Part shown: one piece after another, positions 1,606-17,711 of the stretch
How positions within the stretch are numbered: position 1 is the first letter of the stretch
How the letters are laid out: the number at the start of each line of letters is the position of its first letter
DNA from: Rebecca billardiae RCC1528
Lineage: Eukaryota; Protista; Haptophyta
DNA: 64,000 nucleotides
NCBI GenBank assembly: GCA_965240325.2
Contig: OZ251232.1
Location: forward strand, 806,001-870,000
Reading direction: 5' to 3'
Notes under the pieces: generated by a model
Told to the model about the DNA's origin: nothing
The model's database searches: none
What the model saw: only the letters and a program-made list of their open reading frames with translations
Program-made: the position numbers and the translations under genes

Positions 1606-4600
1606 TCACTCCGGCAGCTCGCAGGGATGCTCGTTCGTGAAGCTGCCGTTCAGTGATTGGGCCAGGCTGCACGCGGTCGACGCCCGCGGCGACAGGTCCG
1701 AGGTGCCGTCTTGCTGCGAGCCCGCGAACTCGTCGAGCCGCGGCGTCGCAGCGGTGGGCGTCCAGTTGCTCATCGGCGAGCGCGAATCGAGGTCCATGTC
1801 GTCTGACGTGCCGATGCTCCGGCTGCAGTTGCTGCTCAGCTTGCTGCTGCCGCGCATGCTGCTGCCGCCGGCCGCGCGCTTGCGCGCGCGCATCGCGCGC
1901 GTGAGTGCGCGGTCGAGCTTGGAGAGCTCATGGCCGATGCGCTGGCGGATGCGGGGCCACTCGGCCCACGCGCCCTGGTTGGAGGCCGTCGCCTCCGCCG
2001 ACGCGGCGCCGGGCACGAGGCACGCGCTCGGGTGCAGCGACTCAATCGTCACGCGCACGTCCGCCACCGCCGCGAGCGTGCCCACCGACAGCGAGGAGAG
2101 GTGGCCGAGCACGCCAGAGAGCACGATCCAGCGGTGCTCGACGCTCGAGTTCTCCTCGGTGAGCGCGTCGACGCGCGCGAGGAGCGCGGTCGCCTCGGCC
2201 AGCAGCGCGCTGTCCAGCACCGCCGTCGACGCCGCATCCTCCGGCAGGCTCGGCAGCGCGGCGCGCGGCGCATTGGACGGGCGCGGCGAGATGCGTAGCG
2301 AGCTGCGCACCGTCCGGGCCTGCTGCGGCGACGGCGGCGGCGGCGGCGGCGGCAGCTGCGCGTGCGAGAGCCGCCCCTCGCCGAGCGTGGGGAGCGAGTT
2401 GGTGTCCGACGCGCGGCGCTCGCGCGCGGACGCCGCCGACGGCTTCGACGGGCGGTACGTCGCAAGGCACATGTCGTCGACCGCGGCGCGGCGCGAGCGC
2501 GGCGCGCCGGGCACGGCCGCGCCGAGCGCGAGATCGAGCGAGAGGGCGGCACCGGATGCGCTCGAGGAGGTGGACGCGCGCGACGGCGCCGGCCGGACGG
2601 GCGGCGCGCGGAGCATCGCCTCCTGCGCGTCGAGCTCGTCCGCGAGCGCCTCGGCGCCGAGCCCCTTCCCCTCCCGCTCGGGGAAGTGGTAGATCCACAG
2701 CGGCGCAATGTCCCTCCGCACCTGCTCGCGGTTGAAGGGTGTCTTGGACATGACGCCGTGCGCGCGCTCGAGGTACACGGCCACGTCGCGCGCCGAGTCG
2801 TTGGCCGAGCGGATGATGGCGAGCAGGCGCGCGGCCTCGGCGGCGTCGAGCTGCGCGCGCGCGCGCGCCACCTGCTCCGAGCCTGAGATCACGCTCACCC
2901 CGTCCACCGGCCGCGCGAGCTCGAGGTTCTCGTCGGCGATCACGAGCACGCGCTGGTCGGGGTGGTCACGCAGCGCGCGCACGACCGAGGCCGCAAAGCC
3001 GAGGGCGTCCTCGTCCTTGCTGCCCGTCACGGTGGTGCGCGCCTCGCACGCGCCGGCGGCGCGGAAGATCCGCTTGAGGATGGCGCGCTGCACCGCCGAG
3101 TCGTCGATCCCCAGCGCGAGCACGTCCGGCGGCAGCTGGAAGGTGTCGAGCTCGGCGGTCGCGCCGTGCACCTTGACTGGCACCTGCAGCCGCACCGTCA
3201 CGAGCTCGTCGGTCGCAAAGACGGAGACGGCGGCGCCGAGCGCCGCGGCGCAGTGGCGCACGATGGAGGTGCCCGCGTCGAGCAGCCCGCCCTCCTCGCC
3301 CACAGCGGGCGCGCCCGACGCCTTCGTCGACGCCGACAGCAGCCGCGCGATCAGCTGGATGTGGCTCGGCCCCGGCTCATTGCTCACGTCAAGCACGAGC
3401 CAGCCACCGTCCAGCGTCACCTCAGCGATCACGTCGCCGTCCTCCGGGCCGTGCTTGTGCGCGTTGGCGACGAGCGAGCGGTAGGCGAGCGCGAGGAGCT
3501 GCGCGTCCACCTCGACGGGCGGGATCGGCACGGGCGCGAGCAGCGTGCACCGGCGGAACGCCAGCGCGCTGCGCGCCCAGCTCACCTCGGTCGAATCTTG
3601 CGAGTGCGCGCGCGATGTGGGCGTGTGCGTGCCAGTGCCCGATTGCTCGTTGGTCGGCGGCGCGGGCACGGCGACGGTGAGGAGCGCGTACGGGTCGATC
3701 ACCTCGGGGCGGGCGATGTACGTGCCGTTGAGCACCTCCACCGTCACCGCGTTCGCGAGCACCGTCTCGAGCGCCGCCTTGAGCGCGCTCTGCAGCTGCG
3801 CCGCCCAGCGGCGCTGCTCCGAGTCCGCGTGCAGTAGCCGCACATCCGGCGGCTGCGCCGACTTGTGGAGCGCCGCCGAGCGCTGGTGCACGCCGCGGAG
3901 GCGCTCCGCGCACTCGACGGCGGCGAGCACGCGGTTCTTCACCTCGTGCCGCAGGAAGTGGTTCGCCTCCTCGTCCTTCCGCCGCGCGAGCGACTCCATC
4001 TCGCGCAGCCGCTCGGCCGCCTGCAGCCCGAGCGCGTGCTCCGCGTCCAGCCTCGCGAGGTGCTCGCCCAGGTCTCGTATCTTGAGCACGACGCCGCGCC
4101 CGTCGCCGACGGAGGAGACGATGACCTGCATCTGCACGAGCTCGCGCGAGGTGAGCACCTCGACCCGCTCGCACTTCAGCCCGCGCCTCGCCTCGTCCGC
4201 CTCGGCGAGCCGCGGCAGGTACCAGCGCAGCTCGACCCGCCGCCCGCGCAGCCCGCGCGCCGCCGTCCACGCCGCGCACACGATGTGGTGCAGGTACGAC
4301 GTGGCCGGCTGCGACGGGTCGGCGACGACGACGATGGGCGGCGTGCGCTGCGGCGCGGTCGCGGGCGCGCCGGAGCCCAGCTCCGGCCCGTCCGGCGGCG
4401 CGCACGCCGCTCCCAGGTCGTCGCACACGCGCACGACGTGCGAGTGGTTGCTCAGCCACGGCGCGGCCGCCTCGTGCCCGAGCACTCGGCAGATCGTCGG
4501 CGTCGCGACCGTGTCGACGGTGAAGGAGGCGTCGGCGTCGAGGCTCTCGGCGGATCCGGGGCCGTCGACGCGCGACGAGAGGACGAGCACGTCCTCCGAG

Positions 4601-4820
4601 TTGGTCCAGAGCTCGCTGTTCTGCTCGTTCATCGCCACCAGCACGTCGTGCGTGTACGTCGCCGCGACGCGCTCGCTCGCCTCCACGATGAGCGCCGGGC
4701 AGAGCAGCGCGCACAGGGCGTCGAGCGCGCAGTTCGCCGCGAAGAAGAACGGGAACTCGAGGTCGGGCGCGGCGGGCGGCCCGCGCTCGTCCGCGCACTC
4801 CGCCGCGCCGGGCGCCGCCG

Positions 4821-4851
<31 letters not shown>

Positions 4852-5721
4852 GCGGCCGGTCGTGAGCGCGACGAGCAGCTCGGCCATCCAGATCGTGAGC
4901 AGCAGCGCGCAGAAGCAGCCGTACGCGAGCGTGAGCTGGAGCGCGAGCCGCGCGCGCAGCCAGCAGAGCCGGTCGTGCGGGGTGCCCGACGACGGTCGCG
5001 AGGACACGTGGCGCCAGCGCTGCGCCGCGAGCCCCACCACCTGCGACGAGCAGCCGGCCGCGATCGGCAGGAGCGCGGCCCACGACCACGCGCGCGCGCC
5101 GCACAGCGGCAGCACGCTGCCGAGCGTCACGACTGCGCCGATGCGCAGGGCGAAGCGCAGCGCGAGGCCGACGGAGTGGCTGTCGATCGCAACGAACAGG
5201 AACGACATGGCCGCCGCGAGTGGCGTCCACTCCGCCAGGCGCACGAGCTGCAAGGGCCGGCCAGAGAGCGGGTCTGTGACGGCAGGCGCGGCCGTGCACG
5301 CCAGCAGCGCGTTCGAGAGCAGCGCGATGCCCTGCACGCTGAGCGCGACGGACATCGCCGCAAAGTCGAGGCGGACTTGCCGGCCGCCCACACCCGCGCC
5401 CACGTACAGCCGCGCGAGCGCCGATATGAGCGCGCCCCCGAGGAGCGCCGCCGAGATCGCCGCGGCCACGCGCTCGCTCGTGCTCAGGTACGCGCGCGGG
5501 GCGCCGGTCAGACCGTACGCGGCGGCGACAAGCGCCCCGAAACACAGCCACGCCGCGATCGCGACGCGCCGGGCGACGCCGGGCGCGTCGATCGCGGCCG
5601 GCGGGATCGTCATCATGTGCGCCGCCCGGCCGGCCGAGCACGAAACAGGGAACGAGTCCGAGCTGGGTAAGGTGATGAAGGGCACGGCCACACGGCGGCA
5701 AGCCTCGGTCGGAGATGGCAC
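1606..5721 (-). CDS. Hybrid sensor histidine kinase: ~8-TM microbial-rhodopsin-like domain (no Schiff-base Lys) + PAS-like + HisKA/HATPase + receiver
   Basis: Single 1371-aa ORF (alternative ATG at 5616). Helix-C-like VRLAEWTPL; helix-G-like LDALCALL; PAS-end VLKIRDL; H-box NHFLRHEVKN; N-box SLVANAHKHG; receiver motifs IDDSAVQR, IADENL, IRSAND, MSKTP. Confidence 0.85.
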
Positions 5722-7017
5722 TCATCTGATTGCGATCTTGTGAGGAGGCCGGCGCGACTTTAAGGAGCCCCAGTAAATACTTAGATACCGTGCTTACCCA
5801 CGTGAGCTTCGGGCAATGATAAGTTTGGCGCTCGTTCGACAGCGGCGTAACTACTTCATAATCATTCGGTTCATTCGTTCGAGGGAGCGCTCATCAGGGG
5901 CGACCCTCATGAAGGCAAGCAGGTACGGGTATGGGGGTAAATGACCCACGTGAAACTTCACGAACCACTTCGTTCAAATCATCGGCTTAATCGCTCTCAG
6001 CTCGGTGATGAACTTCATAAGTGCTCATTACCGGCTCGCCAAAACACCCTTGCCGGGTTGTCATATATGTGTACTCAGCCGGCCTCACTCAGCGATGATG
6101 CCACTAGCGGTTGAACACCATAATGAACCGAATTACCTGGTACTTCCTATCTTGAACGTACAGTCATTAAGACTACTTACCACTACTTACCACTACTATT
6201 GGTACGAATTGCGGAATTTACATTGGAGAGAATGTTCGATGCGTTTGGATGGTGAGGGTGGTCAGGCACCCGCCATCGTGCGGCGACGTCCCACGCCCAC
6301 GTGCGCGACGACGGGAAACCATTCACCGCGACGGGGTCGCCGTTTTCGGCCGCTCCGACGCGCAGACTGCATCCGCGTTGGCCTTCCGGGAGTCCGGGTG
6401 CATTCTGCGCCGCGTACTCGTCCGGACGGCGCCGACCTTCACCTCGCCGCGTTGAATGGTTTCCCAGTTCGAGAAGTGGAGCTTCGGGCGCGACCGCGGC
6501 CCGCATGCCAGGTCCGCGCGGCGCTCTGTGGGCAAGCGAACCAAGAGGCGCAGCGAGTCCGGAGCGGCTGCCGTACAGGTCGAGCGCGAACGCCGAGTCG
6601 CAGCCGCGCGCGCGCCGCGCTCGCCTGGGGGAGAAGGCGCCGGCTGAAGCGCTCCTTCTGCCATGATCACGCGATCCGTGCCGCAGAACTTAGACCTTCG
6701 GACTTGCGCCCAGTTTTGACCAAAGTGAATAAACGATGGATTTTCAACTGCGCGCGCTAGCAGCTGGGTAACCTGACAGTCCGGTCACGGCGCCGGAAAG
6801 ACCTCAGTCGGACGGTGCCATGACGGCCCACAGGCCACACCCGGCGGCGCCGGCGCGCCGCCGGCGAGCGGCGGTTCAGCGGAGGCCTGGGTCAGGGGCT
6901 GACAATGACAAGAGGCCCACCGTCCACGGACGACACTCGGTAAGGCTCACCTTCGCGGGCGTGATTCACTCAGGACGGATAGCGACGCTGTGATGCCACT
7001 ATATGCACGGTCTCGTC

Positions 7018-9191
7018 TCATTGATGCCGAGCAGCGTCGTCGAAGAGGCCTTTCCGCGCCGTCCGCCTCGGCGGGGGCGGCGTCGAGCCCCGCCCGCCCT
7101 CTCCGTCCGCCCATGCAGGCGCATTCGACCCAGCGGCACCTCGCGCCTCAGCGCTGCCATCGGCGCGGTCAGCGAGGACAGAGCGCGCCCCACTTGTGGA
7201 TGCGCCGTCGGTCGGTGCCTCGCGCGGCGCGCCGCCGAGCGCGCGGCCCGACGGGCCCTGGGCGGCGCGGCGCGGCGCGCGGCCCGCCTTCGGCGCCGGC
7301 GCGCCTCCGTCCGCGCCCTCCGCCGCGCGGCGCTTCTTCTTGAGGCGCAAGCGAAACGAGCGCTTCCGGCTGAACGCGCCCGAGATCCCGGCGCCAGACT
7401 CGGCGCCCTCCCGGATCGCCGCGACCAGGTCCTCGTCCGCCGCGCCGTACAGGCAGGTGGCGCGGCCGGCACGCTTCGCGCGCGCCGTGCGGCCCAGCCG
7501 GTGGAGGTGCTCCACGACGTTCGGCGCGAGCGTGTACTCGACGACGTGCTCGACGGCAGCGAGGTCGAGGCCGCGCGCCGCCAGCCCCGTCGAGACGAGC
7601 GCCTGCAGGCCGCCCGCCGAGAACTCGGCCAGCAGCCGCTGCCGCTCCGCCACCGCGAGCTTCTTGTGGAAGGGCGAGGCGCGCACGCCGGCCGCGCTCA
7701 GCACAGCCGCGCCGCGATCGGCGATGGCGACGGTGTTGGCGAAGACGAGGGTGGGGGGGCACGCCGACGGCTCGCCCACCGCGCGCACGAGCGCCTCGTC
7801 GCGCGCGGCGCTCATCACGGGCTGGCCGCCCACGCCGCCCAGCGCCGCGTCCTCGCCGTCCTCCGGGTGGGCCGCGCGCGCGCGGGGGCCGGCAGCCGCG
7901 TGCGCGGCCGTGCTCTCCGCCTCGTCGCCCACGCGCACGAAGCTCACGGCCAGCTCGGGCTTCGTCCGGTGCAGCCCGGACGACTCGACCCACACCGCGG
8001 CCGGGAAGAGGTGGGTCACGTGCGCGCGCACGTTGCGCGTGCCGTACGCGGGCACGGTGGCGCCCACGAGCAGGTGCTGCAGTGGGCGCGCGGGCGCGGG
8101 CGCGTCGCCGTCCTCGGCCCCGTCGGCCTCGGCGGCGCCGCCGAGCTGCGCGCGGCGGCGCTTCTCCTGCCGCAGCGCGAGGAGCAGCTGCTCGCTGCTC
8201 GGCCGCGTCGCGCGGACCGCGTCGCGCGCGCGACGCGAGTGGGCGTGGGCATCGCGCGGCGCCGCGGGCCAACGGGAGCGAGTCAGCGCGGAGTTGCGCG
8301 CACGGCGGCGGGCAGGCGCGGCATGCGGCGCGCACGACACTGTGCGCGCCGGGCGCCGTCCACGCGCTCCGCGCGCACAGCCCCGCACACGCAACCGGGC
8401 GCGCGCGCGCATGCACGTGGGGCGGCGTGCTACAATACCCACATTGGGTACTTCTGCCGCGCGGCCAGCTTGAAGCTGCCGGCAAGCAACGAGTCGACCT
8501 CGTCGAGCACGGCGAAGCGCGCGCGGCGGACGTCCGCGTGGCCGAGCACCTTCGCCGCCGTGCCGACCAGCACGTGCGCGCGCGCCGCGCGGCCCGGGTC
8601 CGTCGCCGGGTCGGCGAGGCACGCCGCCTCCAGATTGCAATCTCGCAGCAGCTCGGCCGCGACGCGGTGCGCCTGGAACGAGAGGTCGGCGTTGGGCTGC
8701 ACGACGAGCACGAGGCCCGGGTCGGGCTCGGGCTGGGTCGCATCGTCGCCCTCCGCCCAGCTCGGCCCGCGAGCCCCATCCGCCGCCTCGCCGAGCAGCG
8801 CGTCGAGCGCAGGCAGCAGGTAGGCGAGCGTCTTGCCGATCCCCGTCTCGCCCGCGATGATCACGTCGGGCAGGTCGGGGTCGCGCACGGCGGGGAACGC
8901 GTCCGCCTGGATGGGCGTGGGCGTCGAGAGGTCGAGCCGCTCGAGCGCAGCGGCGAGCACGGGGTGGAGCCCGAAGTCGGTGAAGCTGCGCTCGGCGCGC
9001 GCGCCGGGCGCGTCGGCGCTCGGCGACGCGCACGCGAGCGCGCGCGCGCGCGGCGGCGGGCCTGTCGGACGTCGCAGCGCGGCGGGGGCGAAGGGCACGC
9101 CACCACGCACGCATCGGCCCAGGGCCGCGCCGCCAAAGCACGCCAGCGCCGAGACCACCAGCGGCCCTCGCGCCGCTCCCACGCGCGGCAT
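7018..9191 (-). CDS. DEAD-box RNA helicase, plastid RH22-like; exons 9191-8443 and 8194-7018
   Basis: Q motif SFTDFGL...PTPIQ, Walker A GETGIGKT, DEVD, GAT, LVFAN, ARGLD, HRLGRTAR, C-terminal FSRKRSFR as in plant RH22. GT-AG intron 8195-8442 joins KYPI/EQLL in frame. Hydrophobic leader followed by an Arg/Ala/Ser-rich transit-like segment. Confidence 0.85.
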
Positions 9192-9266
9192 CGGAATCCG
9201 ACCGGCCCGCGACGAGCCGTGACTGACCGAGGCCGCCGCGCCGCCGCGTGTCACCCTCTCCCCACG

Positions 9267-11000
9267 ATGGCGGCCGTATTAGCCATCGCGCTTGCGCTGG
9301 GCGCAACGCGGCCGCAGTACCAGCACAAGCCGCCCTCCTCGGTGCAGGTCGCGCGCGCTACTGTGTTCAGCGTGCCCACCGGCCTGCCCCTCCAGCAGAA
9401 CGTCGCGCTCCTGTTCGTCCATCCGGTCAAGTGCGGCGGCACGAGCGTGCGGCAGGCCATGTTTGCGGCCAACGCGGCCAACTGGACGCAGGCGGGCAAG
9501 ACGTTCTGCTTCAGCGGCGCCATGCCGGACATGGCCGCGTTCGACGACGCCGCCTTCATGCGTGCGCACCCGCGGCTGTACCTCGAGCTCCACTGCGACA
9601 TCCCGATGTCGCTCAAGACTGGCGGGCGGGTCGACACGATCACGGCCGCGCTGCGCGCGCGCGGCTGGAGCGTGCGCACGGCGATCCTCCTGCGGCACCC
9701 GCTCTCGATCGTGCCCTCGTTCTTCTCCCACTTCGGCCCGGGCAACCCGCGGCGCGCCGTCTCGGCCGACGCCACCCTCGACATGTTCAGCGCCGCGCAC
9801 ACCGAGCTGACCCTCTGCGGCGTGCTGCACGACCAGCGCATGTGCCAGCTGGCCGAGCTGGTCGACGTGGCGCTCCGACCGCGCGCGGGGCGGCGGCGCC
9901 GCCGCCGTCGGGCGGCCGCGCTCGGCGGCGCGGGGCCTCGCGCCGCGCGCGCCGGCGCGGCGCACCGCGCTCGCGGCGAGCATCCCCGCGGCGGCCGCGC
10001 GGCCGGACGAGCGGACGATCCGAGCGGTGGCCGGCCGCGGCGGCGCGCGGCCGCCGCCGAGCCTCCACCGCCCGAGCTGCGCACGGCGGTGGTCGACGCG
10101 CTGGGCTCAGAGATGCACACGCTGGCGCGGCGCGTGCACGCGCTCGTGCCCCCCTCCTTCCGCAAGCTGCCCCGGCAGCTCAGCGCGCCGCACTCCGCGC
10201 CGCCCGCCGTGCGGCAGGCAGTCCTGCTCTTCCTCCGCCGGCTGGCCGCGCGCGCCCCCGAGCTCAGGCCGGACTGCGGGCTGGTCCGCGCCGGGACGGG
10301 CGAGGTCGAGTTCGCGCTCCCGCTGCACACGACCTCGCTGTGGTACCACAAGTGCTCGCGCGAGGCGTTCCGCGCGCTCGTCGACGTGCAGCACGCGTAC
10401 TCTGCCGCGCTCGGCGCGGTGCACCGCGCGTACCCCGAGTTCTGCGAGCGCGCCGTGCGCAAGTGGGAGCGCTGGCTGGGCAAGCTGGACGTGGTGGGGC
10501 TGACGGAGCGGTGGGACGAGTCGTTCATGGCGATCGCGCTCGCGGCGGGCGTCGGGCGCTTCCCGCTGATCGCGCGCAACCGCGCCAGCCGGCGCATCGG
10601 CTGGGACAGCAGCGCCGCCACCAAACACGACGACATCAGCGACGGCACGCGCGCCCTGATTGGCCGGAGCGAGGCGTGCGGCGTGCGCATCTACGAGCGC
10701 TGGGCGGCGCACTTCGAGCGGAGCACGGCCGAGGCGGTGCGCAGCTCGGCCGCGGCGAACCGCACTCTCGAGCGCGTGCGGTACAAGCGCGCGCACATCG
10801 GAGAGGTCGTCGCGCTCGCCGAGACCGTCCTCGGAAGGCACGGCCAGCGGCGCGCGCCCACGCCGGGCTATCTGGACACGATGATGCTCGGGGGCGCCGG
10901 AGGCGTCCTGTCGGCCGCGCCGCTGCGGCTGGAGGGCAGCGTGACCGCCAAGATGCTGCGCAAGTATCGCATCGAGCCCGCTGATGCCGTGCACGGCTGA
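9267..11000 (+). CDS. Secretory-pathway sulfotransferase-like protein (Sulfotransfer_2/Gal3ST-like)
   Basis: Signal peptide MAAVLAIALALGA; 5'-PSB-like FVHPVKCGGTS; 3'-PB-like LRHPLSIVPSFF; VVGLTERWDES. The low-complexity segment ~9870-10070 could be an in-frame intron. Confidence 0.65.
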   Translation: MAAVLAIALALGATRPQYQHKPPSSVQVARATVFSVPTGLPLQQNVALLFVHPVKCGGTSVRQAMFAANAANWTQAGKTFCFSGAMPDMAAFDDAAFMRAHPRLYLELHCDIPMSLKTGGRVDTITAALRARGWSVRTAILLRHPLSIVPSFFSHFGPGNPRRAVSADATLDMFSAAHTELTLCGVLHDQRMCQLAELVDVALRPRAGRRRRRRRAAALGGAGPRAARAGAAHRARGEHPRGGRAAGRADDPSGGRPRRRAAAAEPPPPELRTAVVDALGSEMHTLARRVHALVPPSFRKLPRQLSAPHSAPPAVRQAVLLFLRRLAARAPELRPDCGLVRAGTGEVEFALPLHTTSLWYHKCSREAFRALVDVQHAYSAALGAVHRAYPEFCERAVRKWERWLGKLDVVGLTERWDESFMAIALAAGVGRFPLIARNRASRRIGWDSSAATKHDDISDGTRALIGRSEACGVRIYERWAAHFERSTAEAVRSSAAANRTLERVRYKRAHIGEVVALAETVLGRHGQRRAPTPGYLDTMMLGGAGGVLSAAPLRLEGSVTAKMLRKYRIEPADAVHG

Positions 11001-14300: not shown

Positions 14301-15583
14301 TCACGAGCGGCGGCGGCGGCGTCGGCTGCGCGTGCGCGCCGCCGAGCGCACCCCGCGCCGCCGCCGCCTCGGCCGCCGCCGCGCGCTCCTGCCGCACTGC
14401 GCGCATCTCGTGCTGCAGCGCGTCCAGCCTGAACACTAGCTCGGCGCGCTCGGCGTGCGCGCGCGCCTGGCCCTCCTGCGAGCGCGCGCGCGCCTCGGAG
14501 TCGGCGAGGCGGGCGATCTGCGCGGTGAGCCGCTCGCGCTCGCGCGCGGCCGCCTCGAGCTGCGCGCGCATCTCCGCCTCGCGCTGCGGCTCCCGCTGGG
14601 CGCCCGCCGCCTCTCCGCTCGCACCGCGCTGCCGCCCGGCGGGCGCGCCGCCGCCGCGCTCGCCCGGCCCGGCTGCCGGCTCGTCTTCGGCCGTGTGCGG
14701 CGCGCGCGCCGGTGCGGGCGCGGTGTGCGCCTCGCGCTGCGTCAGCGCCGCGAGCTGCTGCGTGAGCGACGCCTGCAGCGACGCGATCGCCGCCTGCACC
14801 GACGCCTGCTGCGCGCGCGCCGCGGCCGCAACCTCCTGGATCGCTCCCAGCTGCGCCTGCTGCAGCTCGAGCGCTCGCGCGGGCGGCGCTCGCTCGGCGG
14901 CGGCGGGCGCGTGCAGCGCGCGCACGAGCTCGCGAATGTCCGCGCGCGCCTCGTCGAGCGCGTGCGCCGCGGACGCCTCGGTGCTCCGCAGCCGCTGCGC
15001 GAGCGCACGGCTCGTGGCGCGGTCCACGGCGTCCGCCATTGGTGGCACCGCCGCTGCCGCCGCCGCCGTGGCCTCTCCCGCGGCAGCGCTGCCCGCGAGC
15101 GCGCGTGCGCCGCGGGGTTCGGTCGGCGGGGACGCAAAGGTGCCCCCGCCCGCGCCGCCCTGCGCGAAGGCGCTCGCGCAGCAGCTACTCGCCGGCCTCA
15201 GCGCGCCGCCGATCGTGCCGGCCCGCACGGTCGCGAGCGCACGGGGTGGCGGCGTGGGGCCCGGCTCGTCAACCGCGGCGAGCGCGCCGGCGTCGGGGGA
15301 GTGCTGCTCCTGCTGCTGCAGCAGCTCGAGCAGCGTGTCATCCACCACGGCGGAGAGCTGTGCCTTGCTCTGCTGCGGCCGTTCGTCGCTGCCGTCCGCC
15401 AGGCGCATCGCCATCAGCGCCTCGAGCTGCGCGCTGCGGTGCGCGCGCCGTGCGCGCCGAGGGGAGGGCAGGGGGGCTGAGCCGGGCGAAGGGGAGGGGG
15501 GGAGGGCGAAGCGGCGCACCGCGGGCGTACCGTGTGGATGCGTACTCATCGGGCGCGTACTGCTGCGCGTTGGCGGCCAGCAT
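11395..15583 (-). CDS. Large low-complexity coiled-coil hypothetical protein; exons 15583-15531 and 15433-11395
   Basis: Long open frame with Q/E/A-rich coiled-coil stretches. Predicted GT-AG intron 15434-15530 links MLAANAQQYAPDEYASTR to AQLEAL in frame. Confidence 0.6.
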
Positions 15584-15959
15584 GGCGGTTTGAACGTGCT
15601 CTGCCGCCAATCCAAAGAACAAACGGCGGCCCGGACCGTTCTTCATCAGTGAAGAACTCCCAGTCTCAAGAGACAGTCAAGGGCCGTCTGCCCAGTGTGG
15701 TCATTCCAAGTTTCCCAACGGTGTTTACCCACCCACTCATCCGATAATCACGAGTCGCGGAGTCGGGCACTCAATTTCTGGCTCGTCGCTCATCGAAAGG
15801 AGAAAGGGTGCAAAGTGTATTCACGAGCGGGCCAATCAGGTGCTGCCCTTCCCCACCAGCTAACAGGACAGTACACCCATCAACCGCAATCTATCTAGAC
15901 CCGGCCGCCCAGCTCCCAACCGCGCCCTGCCGCCGCCGGCGCCTGCACCGACGCCCGGT

Positions 15960-17348
15960 ATGCTCGTGCTCACCGCCATCCTCCTCAGCCCCGCGATCAA
16001 CAGCGGCGGCGGTGGCGGCGGCTGGCTGCAGCCGCGCGTCGGCGCACGCGCGCGCGCGCTCTTCGGCGCCGTGCGCGCGCTGCCTGTCGCGCCGCCGCGC
16101 GCGCCCGGGACGGCGGCGGCGGCGCCGCCGATCGCGCCGCCGAGTGACGCGGCACAGATTGCGCCGCCGCGCGTCTCGAAGGCCCCGAAGGGCGCCGAGG
16201 ACGGCGGGGAGCTCATCCTGCAGATCTCCGGCCGTCGGTACAACATCACCGCGTACGCGCACGAGCACCCAGGCGGCCAGGCCATCCTGCGCAAGTTCCG
16301 CGACCGCGACGCGACCGAGGCGTTCCTGCGCGCGCACCACTCCAAGGACGCGCACCGGCTGCTGCGCAGCTTCCTCGTGCCCGAGGAGGAGGAGGCGGCG
16401 GCGATCGCCGTCGCGCCGCCGCTGCCGCCGCCCGAGCTGGCCGGCGTCGGCGTGCTCGGCAAGCTGTTCACGCACGAGGACCGCTCGAACGTGCACAAGC
16501 TGCTGGGCGTGTTCGTGCTGCTCCACTTCGCCGCGCGGTACGGCGCGCTGCTGCTCGCGCCGCACGCGCCGGTGGCGGGCCTCGCGGTCGCGCCGGCGCT
16601 CGGCTTCGCGTGCCTCGCCGCGCACGGCGCGCTCTCCGCCTCCTCGCTCAAGTTCGCCGTGCCGCGCGAGCGGGTCGTGGGCAAGCCGATGATCTGGGCA
16701 GAGTTCAGGGCGCACAACATCATCTTTGGGCTGCGCTCGGTGGCGTGCTCAGCCGCTTGCCTCGGCGCGATGGTCGGCGGCACGGCGGCGGCGCGGCGGA
16801 GCGCCGAGCTCGCGTGCGCGGCGTGCGTGCTGCTCGCGCTCCGCGCCGCCGACCTCGCGACCGCCCGGCTGCGCGTCGACACGTCGCAGTCGACCACCGC
16901 GACCATGCCCTACCCCGACGGCTGGCAAGCGCCGACCGTGCGCCGCTTCAAGAGCTTCTACGCGTACAGCCAGTACATGGCGACGCTGGGCTGCCTGGCG
17001 TGCACCAACCCGTCGTACGGGCTGATCATCCTGCTGCCGATCCAGCTCGCCAGCCTGCTGATGACGCTCGTGCGCAAGGGCCTGATCTCGGCGGGCGCGT
17101 ACCACCTGCTGTACGCAGGCTCGCTGTGCATGCCGTACGTGGTCGCGCTGCGCCACGCCGTGCAGCTGCGCGCCTTCGACGCCGTCGCGCTGCTGCCGAT
17201 CGCATCGGCGCTGCTCGCGCTCCGCAGGCGGGGCGTGAGCAAGTACGCGCTCTGGGGTCCGATCGTCGGCGGCCGGCTGCTGCTCGGCGACGCGCTGCTC
17301 ACGACACCGGACAAGTGGCTCGCGCTCGCGGGCGTGGGCGTCGCATGA
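15960..17348 (+). CDS. Cytochrome b5 domain fused to an uncharacterised multi-pass membrane domain; N-terminal targeting signal
   Basis: YNITAYAHEHPGG...DATEAFLRAHHSKDA is a b5 heme motif. Downstream LFTHED..HKLLG, PMIWAEFRAHNIIF, IQLASLLMTLVRKG and several hydrophobic helices. Confidence 0.85.
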   Translation: MLVLTAILLSPAINSGGGGGGWLQPRVGARARALFGAVRALPVAPPRAPGTAAAAPPIAPPSDAAQIAPPRVSKAPKGAEDGGELILQISGRRYNITAYAHEHPGGQAILRKFRDRDATEAFLRAHHSKDAHRLLRSFLVPEEEEAAAIAVAPPLPPPELAGVGVLGKLFTHEDRSNVHKLLGVFVLLHFAARYGALLLAPHAPVAGLAVAPALGFACLAAHGALSASSLKFAVPRERVVGKPMIWAEFRAHNIIFGLRSVACSAACLGAMVGGTAAARRSAELACAACVLLALRAADLATARLRVDTSQSTTATMPYPDGWQAPTVRRFKSFYAYSQYMATLGCLACTNPSYGLIILLPIQLASLLMTLVRKGLISAGAYHLLYAGSLCMPYVVALRHAVQLRAFDAVALLPIASALLALRRRGVSKYALWGPIVGGRLLLGDALLTTPDKWLALAGVGVA

Positions 17349-17671
17349 CGAGCCACCACCCTGTCCAGCACCTCTGTTGCCATCGGAGCCGTCGCACTCT
17401 CTCTCGCACTGTACTGCGGCGACGGCGCTCTGCTGCTTCCGATGCTCGGTGTGGCCGGCAGAGAACATTACGGATTATGCACTGCGCGGCCCCGCCCGCA
17501 CTCAGTTGGGCCGCCCTTGGTTGGCCTTGCCCGCACGGTCCGCCGCGGCATCTGCCAGGATCGGCACGTGATCGACTGCTACGTCTGCTCTCAGAACCGG
17601 TCGAGACTCACGAGTACGACGCAGGCTTTGGCGGAAGGACCCGTACACTCTGTCCTGAGGATATATCGATT

Positions 17672-17672
<1 letters not shown>

Positions 17673-17711
<39 letters not shown>

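What the first reader, a model, noticed from the sequence alone, without database searches (positions are those of the whole stretch)
1606..5721. Lysine-less 8-TM rhodopsin-like domain driving a PAS-His-kinase-receiver phosphorelay
Seen: about 8 hydrophobic helices, with a helix-C-like RLAEWTP (~5220-5250; cf. RYxDWxxTTP) and a helix-G-like LDALCALL (~4700-4730) where the DxxxK lysine position is Ala. These are followed by PAS-like, H-box HEVKN, N-box and receiver motifs; the G boxes look degenerate (VSNEPG, DAGTSIV). Established: enzyme rhodopsins such as algal histidine-kinase rhodopsins, Rh-PDE and Rh-GC have 8 TMs and need that Lys to bind retinal. Inference: a rhodopsin fold repurposed as a light-independent (chemo/lipid) sensor, possibly with atypical kinase activity.
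Basis: partly seen in the sequence, partly recalled or inferred. Interest (0 to 1): 0.8.

Follow-up and report, generated by a model that had tools for sequence, protein, structure and literature searches.

The report
Lysine-less rhodopsin–histidine kinase paralogue
This intact algal gene joins an eight-helix light-sensor (rhodopsin) fold that cannot hold its pigment covalently to a histidine-kinase relay, so it is probably a light-blind member of an undescribed haptophyte/diatom photoreceptor family.

Summary
Window 1606-5616 (-) is one uninterrupted CDS (M36 to stop, 1336 aa, GC3 0.96).

**Membrane domain**
- Residues 49-359 are a type-1 rhodopsin fold with the extra helix TM0.
- The AF2 model has pLDDT 89. 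VIA Z is 23.4 to Salpingoeca Rh-PDE and about 20 to SRII/BR.
- A profile of 56 relatives hits Rh-PDE at E 7e-8.
- Pfam sees no rhodopsin in this protein or in any of 50 relatives.

**Loss of the pigment site**
- All 53 intact relatives have Lys in the D-x-x-x-K motif of the last helix. This protein has Ala338.
- It has no Lys anywhere in residues 1-515.
- It also lacks a Trp that all 56 relatives keep (Cys271 here).
- It keeps the fewest family-conserved membrane columns, 20 of 37.

**Cytoplasmic part**
- The order is PAS-like, DHp (His592 kept), ATP-binding domain, receiver, then an HPt-like bundle.
- The ATP-binding domain is the most degenerate in the family (24/44).
- The receiver is fully conserved (36/40; Asp930 and Lys993 kept).
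- In the HPt-like bundle the family His aligns with Ser.

**Reading:** a retinal-free but still selected relay component. What it senses, if anything, is untested.

The scan reported the Lys-bearing family repeatedly on other DNA of this genome. Lys-less rhodopsins (Rh-noK, AsRhoPDE) are known. This is a new variant, not a new kind.

The parts
1606..5616 (-). Whole CDS, M36 to stop (1336 aa). No intron is needed.
   Evidence: GC3 is 0.957 over the CDS and uniform across domains. That equals the neighbouring cyt-b5 gene (0.961); flanks have GC 0.54-0.69. The family profile aligns from aa 48 to 1276.
4645..5577 (-). 8-TM rhodopsin-fold domain, aa 49-359. TM0 is aa 49-70; helices A-G follow, with a B-C beta hairpin at aa 145-158.
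   Evidence: AF2 pLDDT 89.1, pTM 0.88. Foldseek top hits are 7d7q/7cj3. VIA Z 23.4 over 268 aa to 7d7q_A, including TM0. The family HMM built without this protein aligns at E 3e-42.
5221..5241 (-). Helix C motif R161-L-A-E164-W165-T-P. The family consensus is R-W-x-E-W-T-P; Rh-PDE has R-Y-A-E-W.
   Evidence: The profile alignment to Rh-PDE places R, E and W in the same columns. In this protein the family Trp (93%) is Leu162.
4909..4911 (-). Cys271, in the column that is Trp in all 56 relatives (seventh helix, helix F).
   Evidence: It is not the BR W182 position. That position aligns 7 residues later, at W278 of this protein.
4762..4854 (-). Ala-rich insertion of 31 aa (aa 290-320) between helices F and G. 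Relatives lack it.
   Evidence: pLDDT dips to about 63 here.
4708..4722 (-). Helix G D334-A-L-C-A338, where the family has D-V-x-x-K. The Schiff-base Lys is replaced by Ala (codon GCG).
   Evidence: Rh-PDE D-Y-A-A-K and 6lm0 D-V-C-A-K align to the family D-x-x-x-K.
4069..4599 (-). PAS-like alpha/beta domain, aa 375-551, following the helix-G extension.
   Evidence: The AF2 strand/helix pattern. Foldseek alignments of about 500 columns to LOV-histidine-kinase chimeras 8a6x and 4gcz. Family motifs W-E-x-S-S-D-V and R-D-I-S-E-R are partly kept. No Pfam hit.
3730..4071 (-). DHp two-helix hairpin, aa 551-664, with the phospho-acceptor H592 in R-H-E-V-K-N (codon 3946-3948).
   Evidence: (helices 551-620 and 626-664).
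3178..3705 (-). CA (ATP-binding) domain, aa 673-848. N-box N753 and the family G1-like N781-x-P-G-x-x-H787 are kept. The G2-like G-D-G-A-W is D-A-G-T-S here and the lid is about 16 aa shorter.
   Evidence: Pfam HATPase_c at E 3e-4, below its cut-off. The family profile hits solved HKs 9m08 and 3sl2. This protein keeps 24/44 conserved columns, the lowest of the family.
2686..3126 (-). Receiver domain, aa 866-1012. D873/D874 follow beta1, D930 ends beta3, S972 ends beta4, and K993 follows beta5.
   Evidence: AF2 pLDDT above 90 with a (beta-alpha)5 topology. It keeps 36/40 family-conserved columns. Foldseek top hit is the hybrid kinase ShkA, 6qrj. No Pfam Response_reg hit.
2242..2664 (-). Low-complexity Ala/Pro/Ser linker, aa 1020-1160, absent from relatives.
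   Evidence: the alignment gap in all others. pLDDT about 30.
1870..2238 (-). HPt-like four-helix bundle, aa 1162-1284. The family L-H-x-L-K-G-D-L reads L-S1202-G-V-L-G-H1207-L here.
   Evidence: AF2 helices at pLDDT 80-90. The family relative P0073 is named 'HPt domain-containing protein' by its source. H->S1202 and K->L1205 by MAFFT.

Best explanation
This is an intact, selected gene for a retinal-free (light-blind) paralogue of a haptophyte/diatom family. The family's architecture is 8-TM enzyme-rhodopsin, PAS-like, histidine kinase, receiver, HPt.

**Shown**
- The membrane domain has the Rh-PDE-type rhodopsin fold and belongs to the family.
- It has Ala where the intact relatives have the Schiff-base Lys, and no Lys at all in the first 515 residues.
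- It has lost further family-invariant membrane residues.
- The DHp His and a fully conserved receiver remain.
- The ATP-binding domain and the HPt His are degenerate.

**Inferred**
- It cannot form a retinal Schiff base and does not sense light itself.
- The rhodopsin domain survives mainly as a membrane anchor and dimer scaffold.
- The protein still takes part in phosphotransfer through His592 and Asp930.

**Most likely mode (inference only):** a light-independent acceptor or modulator working with the Lys-bearing paralogues of the same genome. That could be as a heterodimer partner or as a phosphate sink, rather than as an autonomous light-gated kinase. A constitutive, light-independent kinase or phosphatase is the other version of the same reading.
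For: **Fold**
- Z 23.4 to 7d7q, with all eight helices aligned.

**Homology**
- the family profile hits Rh-PDE at E 7e-8, and every weaker hit is a rhodopsin.
- E 3e-42 to the family HMM built without this protein.

**Lys loss**
-.
- GCG against AAG needs two base changes, so this is not a single-base error.

**Derived state**
- The nearest relatives are a clade of 13 rows (SH-aLRT 96) that includes Diacronema and Rebecca.
- All intact members of it keep K and the invariant W.

**Uneven constraint**
- Receiver 36/40 against CA 24/44, Fisher p 0.0005.
- CA against the two clade relatives, 0.55 against 0.85, p 0.0003.
- The receiver is equal to the relatives, 0.90 against 0.86.
- This is not what neutral decay gives.

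**Coding signature**
- A 1336-codon open frame with GC3 0.957.

**Precedents**
- AsRhoPDE is an enzyme rhodopsin with Asn in place of the Lys (PMC8774190).
- Rh-noK genes are expressed in Guillardia (PMC7714340).
- Chytrid rhodopsin-cyclases work only as heterodimers (abstract of PMC8815786).
Against: - No expression data. No RNA run was listed.
- The protein is absent from the 15-billion-protein collection, although the neighbouring gene is present in two Logan assemblies.
- No orthologue closer than 36% identity was found. Conservation of the Lys-less state across species, and dN/dS, could therefore not be tested.
- The partner or phosphate-sink role is pure inference. No interaction evidence exists.
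- R161, E164, W165 and D334 are retained, which could mean the pocket still does something.
- Much of the ATP site is kept (N753, N781, P783, G784, H787, G817), so autokinase activity is not excluded.
- The AF2 fold was predicted from the family alignment. It therefore shows the family's fold rather than an independent fold of this divergent copy.
Confidence: 0.6

Rival explanations
1. The rhodopsin pocket has been repurposed as a light-independent sensor of a ligand, ion, pH, redox state or lipid, which gates the kinase.
For: - The buried charged set R161/E164/D334 and W165 is retained although the Lys is gone.
- Several former conserved positions are now Cys: C271, C337 and C341.
- The PAS-like and DHp modules that would transmit a signal are intact.
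Against: - Helix 8 and the membrane domain are the least conserved of the family: 1/5 and 20/37 columns. Helix 8 no longer scores against the family HMM. That looks like relaxation rather than a newly tuned pocket.
- Cys content is 3.4%, within the family range (median 2.6, maximum 4.5).
- No orthologues exist to show a conserved new pocket.
Confidence: 0.17
2. The gene is on its way to being lost. It is a redundant paralogue whose sensor Lys, ATP lid and HPt His have already decayed, and it makes no functional protein.
For: - Three functional sites in three domains are hit: K338A, G2/lid, and HPt His.
- It has the longest terminal branch in the tree, 2.05 against a median of 0.71.
- The protein is absent from public protein collections although its neighbour is present.
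- AsRhoPDE without its Lys failed to accumulate in oocytes (PMC8774190).
Against: - An open frame of 1336 codons with no frameshift, and GC3 0.957 in every domain.
- The receiver keeps 36/40 conserved columns, like Lys-bearing relatives, and H592 and D930 are intact. With a membrane-domain branch of about 2 substitutions per site, neutral decay would have erased these.
- Other members of its clade also have long branches, 1.6-1.9.
Confidence: 0.18
3. It is still a photoreceptor. It would bind retinal non-covalently, or bind another chromophore, for example through one of the pocket cysteines.
For: - The counter-ion-type residues E164 and D334 and the helix-C Trp are kept.
- W278 sits at the column aligned with the Rh-PDE and 6lm0 helix-F Trp.
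Against: - There is no Lys in the whole membrane domain.
- The family-invariant Trp and the Tyr after the Lys are lost.
- Lys-less microbial rhodopsins are reported as showing no retinal binding (abstract of bioRxiv 10.1101/2025.04.29.651185). This point rests on the abstract only.
Confidence: 0.04

Closest known systems
Rhodopsin phosphodiesterase (Rh-PDE/RhoPDE) of choanoflagellates, in particular the Lys-less AsRhoPDE
   Same: - 8-TM enzyme-rhodopsin fold with TM0: best structural match, Z 23.4, and best profile match, E 7e-8.
- Glu, not Asp, in the helix-C R-x-x-E-W motif.
- AsRhoPDE also has the Schiff-base Lys replaced, by Asn296 (PMC8774190).
   Different: - The output here is PAS-like, histidine kinase, receiver and HPt, not a phosphodiesterase.
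- About 10% sequence identity.
- Helix C is shorter between W and P (E-W-T-P against E-W-I-I-T-C-P).
- It comes from a haptophyte lineage.
Histidine kinase rhodopsins (HKR) of green algae (Chlamydomonas HKR1, Ostreococcus Ot-HKR) and the putative HKRs of Guillardia
   Same: The same logic: an N-terminal type-1 rhodopsin, then a histidine kinase, then a receiver, in one chain (review PMC12558739; PMC7714340).
   Different: - Those bind retinal through the Lys.
- No cyclase is present here.
- A PAS-like domain and an HPt-like tail are present here.
- Pfam Bac_rhodopsin does not detect this family, 0 of 51.
- Common descent with chlorophyte HKRs was not tested, because I had no tool-given HKR sequence.
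Rh-noK: microbial-rhodopsin-like proteins lacking the retinal Lys (bacterial Rh-noK, Guillardia Rh-noK, fungal opsin-related proteins)
   Same: - A rhodopsin fold without the Lys.
- Presumed retinal-free function.
- They occur as paralogues next to Lys-bearing rhodopsins in the same genome (PMC7714340).
   Different: As summarised in PMC7714340, those are not described with fused output domains. This one carries a complete relay chain.
The undescribed haptophyte/diatom rhodopsin-PAS-HK-REC-HPt family (scan findings s1-343710, s1-365395 and others; representatives P0002 Cylindrotheca, P0073 and P0077 Diacronema, P0039 Rebecca)
   Same: - Full-length collinear homology, aa 48-1276.
- The same eight helices, and the same G1-like N-x-P-G-x-x-H motif.
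- The same receiver motifs D-E-N-L and R-S-A-N-D-S.
   Different: - It is the only intact member among 54 without the Lys and without the invariant helix-F Trp.
- It has the lowest conservation in the membrane and CA domains.
- It carries two private low-complexity insertions.
RetS and DivL-type pseudo-kinases of bacteria
   Same: These are histidine-kinase folds with impaired catalysis that act through other kinases. Both appear among the Foldseek hits (6dk7, 4q20). This is a functional analogy only.
   Different: - They are bacterial.
- They have a different sensor domain.
- No homology beyond the generic HK fold is implied.
- The analogy rests on my own knowledge, not on a test here.

Membership tests
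Type-1 (microbial) rhodopsin superfamily | Seven-helix rhodopsin fold and detectable homology | tested here: met
   VIA Z about 20 to SRII, BR and xenorhodopsin over 205-233 aa. In the profile search every hit up to E 10 is a rhodopsin, and Rh-PDE scores 7e-8. The best Atlas shape match is a bacteriorhodopsin cluster, TM 0.82.
Type-1 (microbial) rhodopsin superfamily | Schiff-base Lys in helix G (BR K216) within D-x-x-x-K | tested here: not met
   A338 (GCG) is in the Lys column, and there is no Lys in aa 1-515. The Asp four residues before it (D334) is kept.
Type-1 (microbial) rhodopsin superfamily | Retinal binding and photocycle | not testable with these tools
   Needs expression with all-trans retinal and spectroscopy.
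8-TM enzyme rhodopsins (Rh-PDE / RhGC / HKR type) | Extra N-terminal helix TM0, so that both termini are cytoplasmic | tested here: met
   Model residues 4-321 align to 7d7q_A residues 45-318 with 268 aligned. The profile alignment to Rh-PDE starts in TM0.
8-TM enzyme rhodopsins (Rh-PDE / RhGC / HKR type) | C-terminal enzyme domain fused through a helical linker | tested here: met
   Helix G continues into a linker helix (aa 347-373), then PAS-like, DHp and CA.
Histidine kinase rhodopsin (HKR) | DHp with phospho-acceptor His | tested here: met
   H592 in R-H-E-V-K-N sits on the first long DHp helix.
Histidine kinase rhodopsin (HKR) | Competent ATP-binding CA domain (N, G1, G2 boxes) | tested here: inconclusive
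   The N-box Asn and the family G1-like motif are kept. G2-like G-D-G-A-W is D-A-G-T-S here and the lid is shortened, giving 24/44 columns. HATPase_c scores 20.5-21.8 bits, below its cut-off of 26.4.
Histidine kinase rhodopsin (HKR) | Receiver domain with phospho-acceptor Asp | tested here: met
   A (beta-alpha)5 model at pLDDT above 90. D930 ends beta3, and D873/D874, S972 and K993 are in their canonical places.
Histidine kinase rhodopsin (HKR) | Common descent with chlorophyte HKRs | not tested
Rh-noK (Lys-less rhodopsin-like proteins; a descriptive class) | Rhodopsin homology plus absence of the helix-G Lys | tested here: met
HPt phosphotransfer domain | Four-helix bundle with an exposed His in H-x-x-K-G on the second helix | tested here: not met
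   The bundle is predicted. The family L-H-x-L-K-G aligns to L-S1202-G-V-L-G here. H1207 lies five residues later on the same helix, so an alternative register cannot be excluded.

The most novel reading that the evidence does not exclude
The Lys-less paralogue is a dedicated 'dark' subunit. It would pair through its rhodopsin and DHp domains with retinal-binding paralogues of the same genome, and set their output by accepting or draining phosphate through His592 and Asp930. That would be a pseudo-receptor layer inside a eukaryotic light-driven phosphorelay, comparable in logic to the obligate heterodimers of chytrid rhodopsin-cyclases.
Probability: 0.2. Interest if true: 0.75.

Novelty: new variant of a known kind. 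Interest (0 to 1): 0.55.

Why it matters
- The parent family is an 8-TM rhodopsin wired to a full His-Asp relay in haptophytes and diatoms. It is invisible to Pfam's rhodopsin model, and I found it described in no searchable paper.
- This copy is a natural 'dark' control for that family. The pigment Lys, the ATP lid and the HPt His are altered, while the receiver stays under constraint.
- It can therefore show which parts of these proteins work without light.
- It can also show whether enzyme rhodopsins of the kinase type use catalytically or optically dead partners.
- It warns annotators that rhodopsin-fold genes in algal genomes are not all photoreceptors.

Tried and rejected
- **Family scans.** Pfam and NCBIfam on the whole protein and on five pieces gave only a sub-threshold HATPase_c.
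- **Single-sequence PDB search.** phmmer against PDB sequences gave nothing relevant.
- **Word-index search.** Run twice, on the whole protein and on aa 560-1012. No candidate scored, probably because Ala/Pro-rich words filled the candidate list.
- **Exact-sequence look-ups.** Tried with three possible starts; not on record.
- **Metagenome scan for close relatives.** None found.
- **Expression.** No RNA run was listed, so read laying was not used and expression is untested.
- **Other Lys-less members.** I first counted three further rows, P0065, P0055 and P0081. All three break off or lose similarity right after helix 7, so I rejected them as artefacts.
- **The invariant Trp.** I first took the family-invariant helix-F Trp for BR W182. 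The profile alignments to Rh-PDE and 6lm0 put that position seven residues later, where this protein has W278. The lost Trp (C271) is therefore a family-specific residue of unknown role.
- **Glocal alignment.** hmmalign does not align helix 8 at all. The register D334/A338 rests on MAFFT, on a weak helix-8-only HMM and on the model.
- **Cysteine-rich pocket.** An idea of an unusually Cys-rich pocket was dropped: 3.4% Cys is within the family range.
- **Tandem paralogue.** None in the window.
Full report
**1. The gene**

The ORF at 1606-5721 (-) was listed mechanically. In a window of about 72% GC, long ORFs appear in all frames, so I checked codon periodicity.
- GC3 is 0.85-0.97 in every 40-codon block from about aa 21 to the stop. 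It is 0.53-0.65 upstream.
- From the first ATG (M36, window 5616) the CDS has GC1/2/3 = 0.73/0.55/0.957. That is the same as the neighbouring cyt-b5 gene (0.961) and uniform over all domains.
- The other long ORFs overlapping it are frame artefacts of the high GC.
- No intron is needed. The family profile aligns collinearly from aa 48 to 1276.

**2. What standard searches see**
- Pfam and NCBIfam find only a sub-threshold HATPase_c.
- phmmer against PDB sequences finds nothing.
- Two word-index searches were blank.
- A language-model look-alike search gave a weak lead (0.81) to a haptophyte cluster partly carrying Bac_rhodopsin.

**3. The family**

An exhaustive phmmer search with aa 36-360 found 81 representatives. 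The best has 36% identity and none is a self-hit.
- Named members come from the diatom Cylindrotheca and from the pavlovophyte haptophytes Diacronema lutheri and Rebecca.
- Iterated HMMs give one coherent domain.
- The alignment shows eight hydrophobic helices. There is a D-P-x-T-G hairpin before R-W-x-E-W-T-P-L-A-F, an invariant Trp in the seventh helix, and D-V-x-x-K-x-x-Y in the eighth.
- None of 51 sequences scanned reaches Pfam Bac_rhodopsin at E 0.001.

**4. Is it a rhodopsin?**

Yes.
- The family profile hits the transmembrane domain of Salpingoeca Rh-PDE (7cj3, 7d7q) at E 7e-8. All weaker hits are rhodopsins: 6lm0, ChRmine, bestrhodopsin and SRII.
- That alignment starts in TM0, matches R-Y-A-E-W of Rh-PDE to the family R-W-x-E-W, and matches D-Y-A-A-K to D-V-x-x-K.
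- AF2 with the 57-row alignment gives pLDDT 89.1 and pTM 0.88, with TM0, seven helices and a B-C hairpin.
- The Foldseek top four hits are Rh-PDE, followed by bacteriorhodopsins.
- VIA-align gives Z 23.4 with 268 of 278 residues aligned to 7d7q_A, and Z about 20 to SRII, BR and xenorhodopsin.
- The best ESM Atlas shape match is a bacteriorhodopsin cluster.
- Caveat: the model leans on the family alignment, so it shows the family fold.

**5. The missing lysine**
- In the 57-row alignment the Lys column is K in 53 of the 56 relatives.
- The three exceptions (P0065, P0055, P0081) break off or lose all similarity just after helix 7, so they are truncated or frame-broken entries.
- This protein has an intact eighth helix, with D334 in the Asp column and A338 in the Lys column.
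- The A338 codon is GCG, two changes away from AAG.
- The register is supported by MAFFT and by a helix-8-only HMM that places N-C-A-L-D-A-L and L-I-V-E collinearly. The score of that HMM is only marginal, and a glocal alignment skips helix 8 altogether.
- The register does not decide the main point. The first Lys of the protein is K516, so no Lys is available anywhere in the membrane domain.

**6. Further losses in the membrane domain**
- Of 37 columns conserved in at least 70% of relatives, this protein keeps 20. That is the lowest of all 57 rows; the others keep 23-35.
- Lost: the Trp invariant in all 56 relatives (C271), the Trp after the helix-C Arg (L162), the S-T pair of the fifth helix (V197, V198), and the Tyr after the Lys (C341).
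- Kept: R161, E164, W165, D150, P146, G201, P205, W214 and D334.
- The invariant Trp is not the BR W182 equivalent. That column aligns seven residues later, where this protein and its nearest subclade have Trp (W278).

**7. Where it branches**
- In a maximum-likelihood tree of the membrane domain it falls in a 13-row clade (SH-aLRT 96) with the Diacronema and Rebecca proteins.
- Shared motifs (G-R-P in the hairpin, I-W-x-x-D/E in helix F) link it to a subclade whose members all keep the Lys and the Trp. The Lys-less state is therefore derived.
- Its terminal branch is the longest, 2.05 against a median of 0.71. Other members of this clade are also long, at 1.6-1.9.

**8. The cytoplasmic part**

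Alignment with 24 long relatives is collinear. AF2 (pLDDT 67 overall, high in the domains) gives this order:

| Element | Residues |
|---|---|
| Helical extension of helix G | 347-373 |
| PAS-like alpha/beta domain | 375-551 |
| Two long DHp helices | 551-664 |
| CA domain | 673-848 |
| (beta-alpha)5 receiver, pLDDT above 90 | 866-1012 |
| Disordered linker | about 1020-1160 |
| Four-helix bundle | 1162-1284 |
| Disordered tail | 1285-1371 |

- Foldseek returns the hybrid kinase ShkA, LOV-histidine-kinase chimeras, phytochromes and HK853.
- The family CA profile hits solved kinases at E 1e-5.
- Pfam recognises only HATPase_c in 19 of 20 members, and no HisKA, Response_reg or Hpt.

**9. Uneven conservation**

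Counts of family-conserved columns kept by this protein:

| Domain | Columns kept | Note |
|---|---|---|
| Membrane domain | 20/37 | lowest of the family |
| PAS-like | 10/20 | typical for its clade |
| DHp | 23/33 | H592 kept |
| CA | 24/44 | lowest of the family |
| Receiver | 36/40 | as good as any member |
| HPt-like | 6/11 | family His aligned with S1202 |

- Receiver against CA differs at p 0.0005. CA differs from two clade relatives at p 0.0003. The receiver does not differ from them.
- The solved kinase 9m08 has N-S-G-E at the aligned place.
- The G2-like G-D-G-A-W is specific to the relatives and reads D-A-G-T-S here, with a shorter lid.

**10. Reading**
- A protein that had decayed neutrally for about two substitutions per site would not keep a receiver at 90% of family-conserved columns. 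It would also not keep an open 1336-codon frame or full codon bias.
- So the gene has been under selection. That selection sits on the DHp His and the receiver, not on the pigment site, the ATP lid or the HPt His.
- I therefore read it as a retinal-free, light-blind relay component.
- Whether it is a partner or sink for the Lys-bearing paralogues, a constitutive enzyme, or a sensor of something new cannot be decided here.
- I give the partner/sink version about 0.2 on its own. The general 'retinal-free but functional, sensor domain largely a relic' reading gets 0.6.
- Gene decay (0.18) and a repurposed pocket (0.17) remain open.

**11. Comparison with what is known**
- Enzyme rhodopsins with eight helices are described from fungi, green algae and choanoflagellates. 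HKRs are described from green algae (PMC12558739) and putatively from Guillardia (PMC7714340).
- An ocean metatranscriptome survey with custom rhodopsin profiles detected no rhodopsin-histidine-kinase transcripts (PMC8017926).
- A survey of eukaryotic histidine kinases listed only three for Emiliania, and its single mention of rhodopsin was not among the passages I read (PMC6324907).
- Six literature searches found no description of this haptophyte/diatom family.
- Lys-less rhodopsins are well known. About 600 of 5,558 microbial rhodopsin genes are Rh-noK, and nine of the 42 in Guillardia are, six of them expressed (PMC7714340).
- One Lys-less enzyme rhodopsin, AsRhoPDE (Asn296), has been studied. 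It did not accumulate in oocytes, and its N296K mutant did (PMC8774190).
- A Lys-less kinase-type enzyme rhodopsin is thus a new variant, not a new kind.

**12. Relation to earlier scan findings**
- After I had the family and the Rh-PDE match, the findings index showed that this scan had already reported the Lys-bearing family at least eight times on other pieces of the same genome.
- My independent results agree with those notes on the fold, the family range and the lack of literature.
- I could not read those paralogues myself.

**13. Limits**
- No expression evidence: no RNA run was listed, and read laying was not used.
- No close orthologue.
- No residue-level structural superposition, because the model coordinates are not readable by scripts.

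Noticed in passing
window 15460-17700: The neighbouring cyt-b5 fusion gene (15960-17348, +) is present, 100% identical and collinear, on Logan contigs of two runs, ERR14847148 and ERR14847151. Both contigs end within 2 bases of each other, about 350 nt after the stop, which looks like a transcript end. The rhodopsin-kinase gene about 10 kb away is not on record in the same collection.
   Followed up: partly
window 3422-5743, both strands: Three further ORFs of 600-770 aa overlap the real CDS in other frames, at 3422-5725 (-), 3545-5743 (+) and 3865-5670 (+). They are Arg/Ala/Gly-rich artefacts of 72% GC, not genes. The periodicity supports only the 1606-5616 frame.
   Followed up: yes
window 7018-9306 (-): ORFs here carry DEAD-box helicase motifs readable in the translations: a Q-motif-like P-T-P-I-Q, G-E-T-G-I-G-K-T, and D-E-V-D. 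The motifs are split over two frames, which suggests an intron or a frame change.
   Followed up: no
family-wide (alignment A3; window 3361-3381 in this protein): The whole family has N-x-P-G-x-x-H where canonical histidine kinases have the G1 box D-x-G-x-G, and G-D-G-A-W at G2. Whether these kinases bind ATP in the usual way is an open question for the entire family.
   Followed up: partly
window 2242-2664 and 4762-4854 (-): Two private low-complexity insertions. One is a 31-aa Ala-rich loop between helices F and G. The other is a roughly 140-aa Ala/Pro/Ser linker with a run of seven Pro between the receiver and the HPt-like bundle. Both have full coding GC3.
   Followed up: partly
P0065, P0055, P0081 (public representatives): Three public family entries lose similarity right after helix 7. 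They are probably frame-shifted or intron-retaining gene models, and they would wrongly count as Lys-less in an automated survey.
   Followed up: partly
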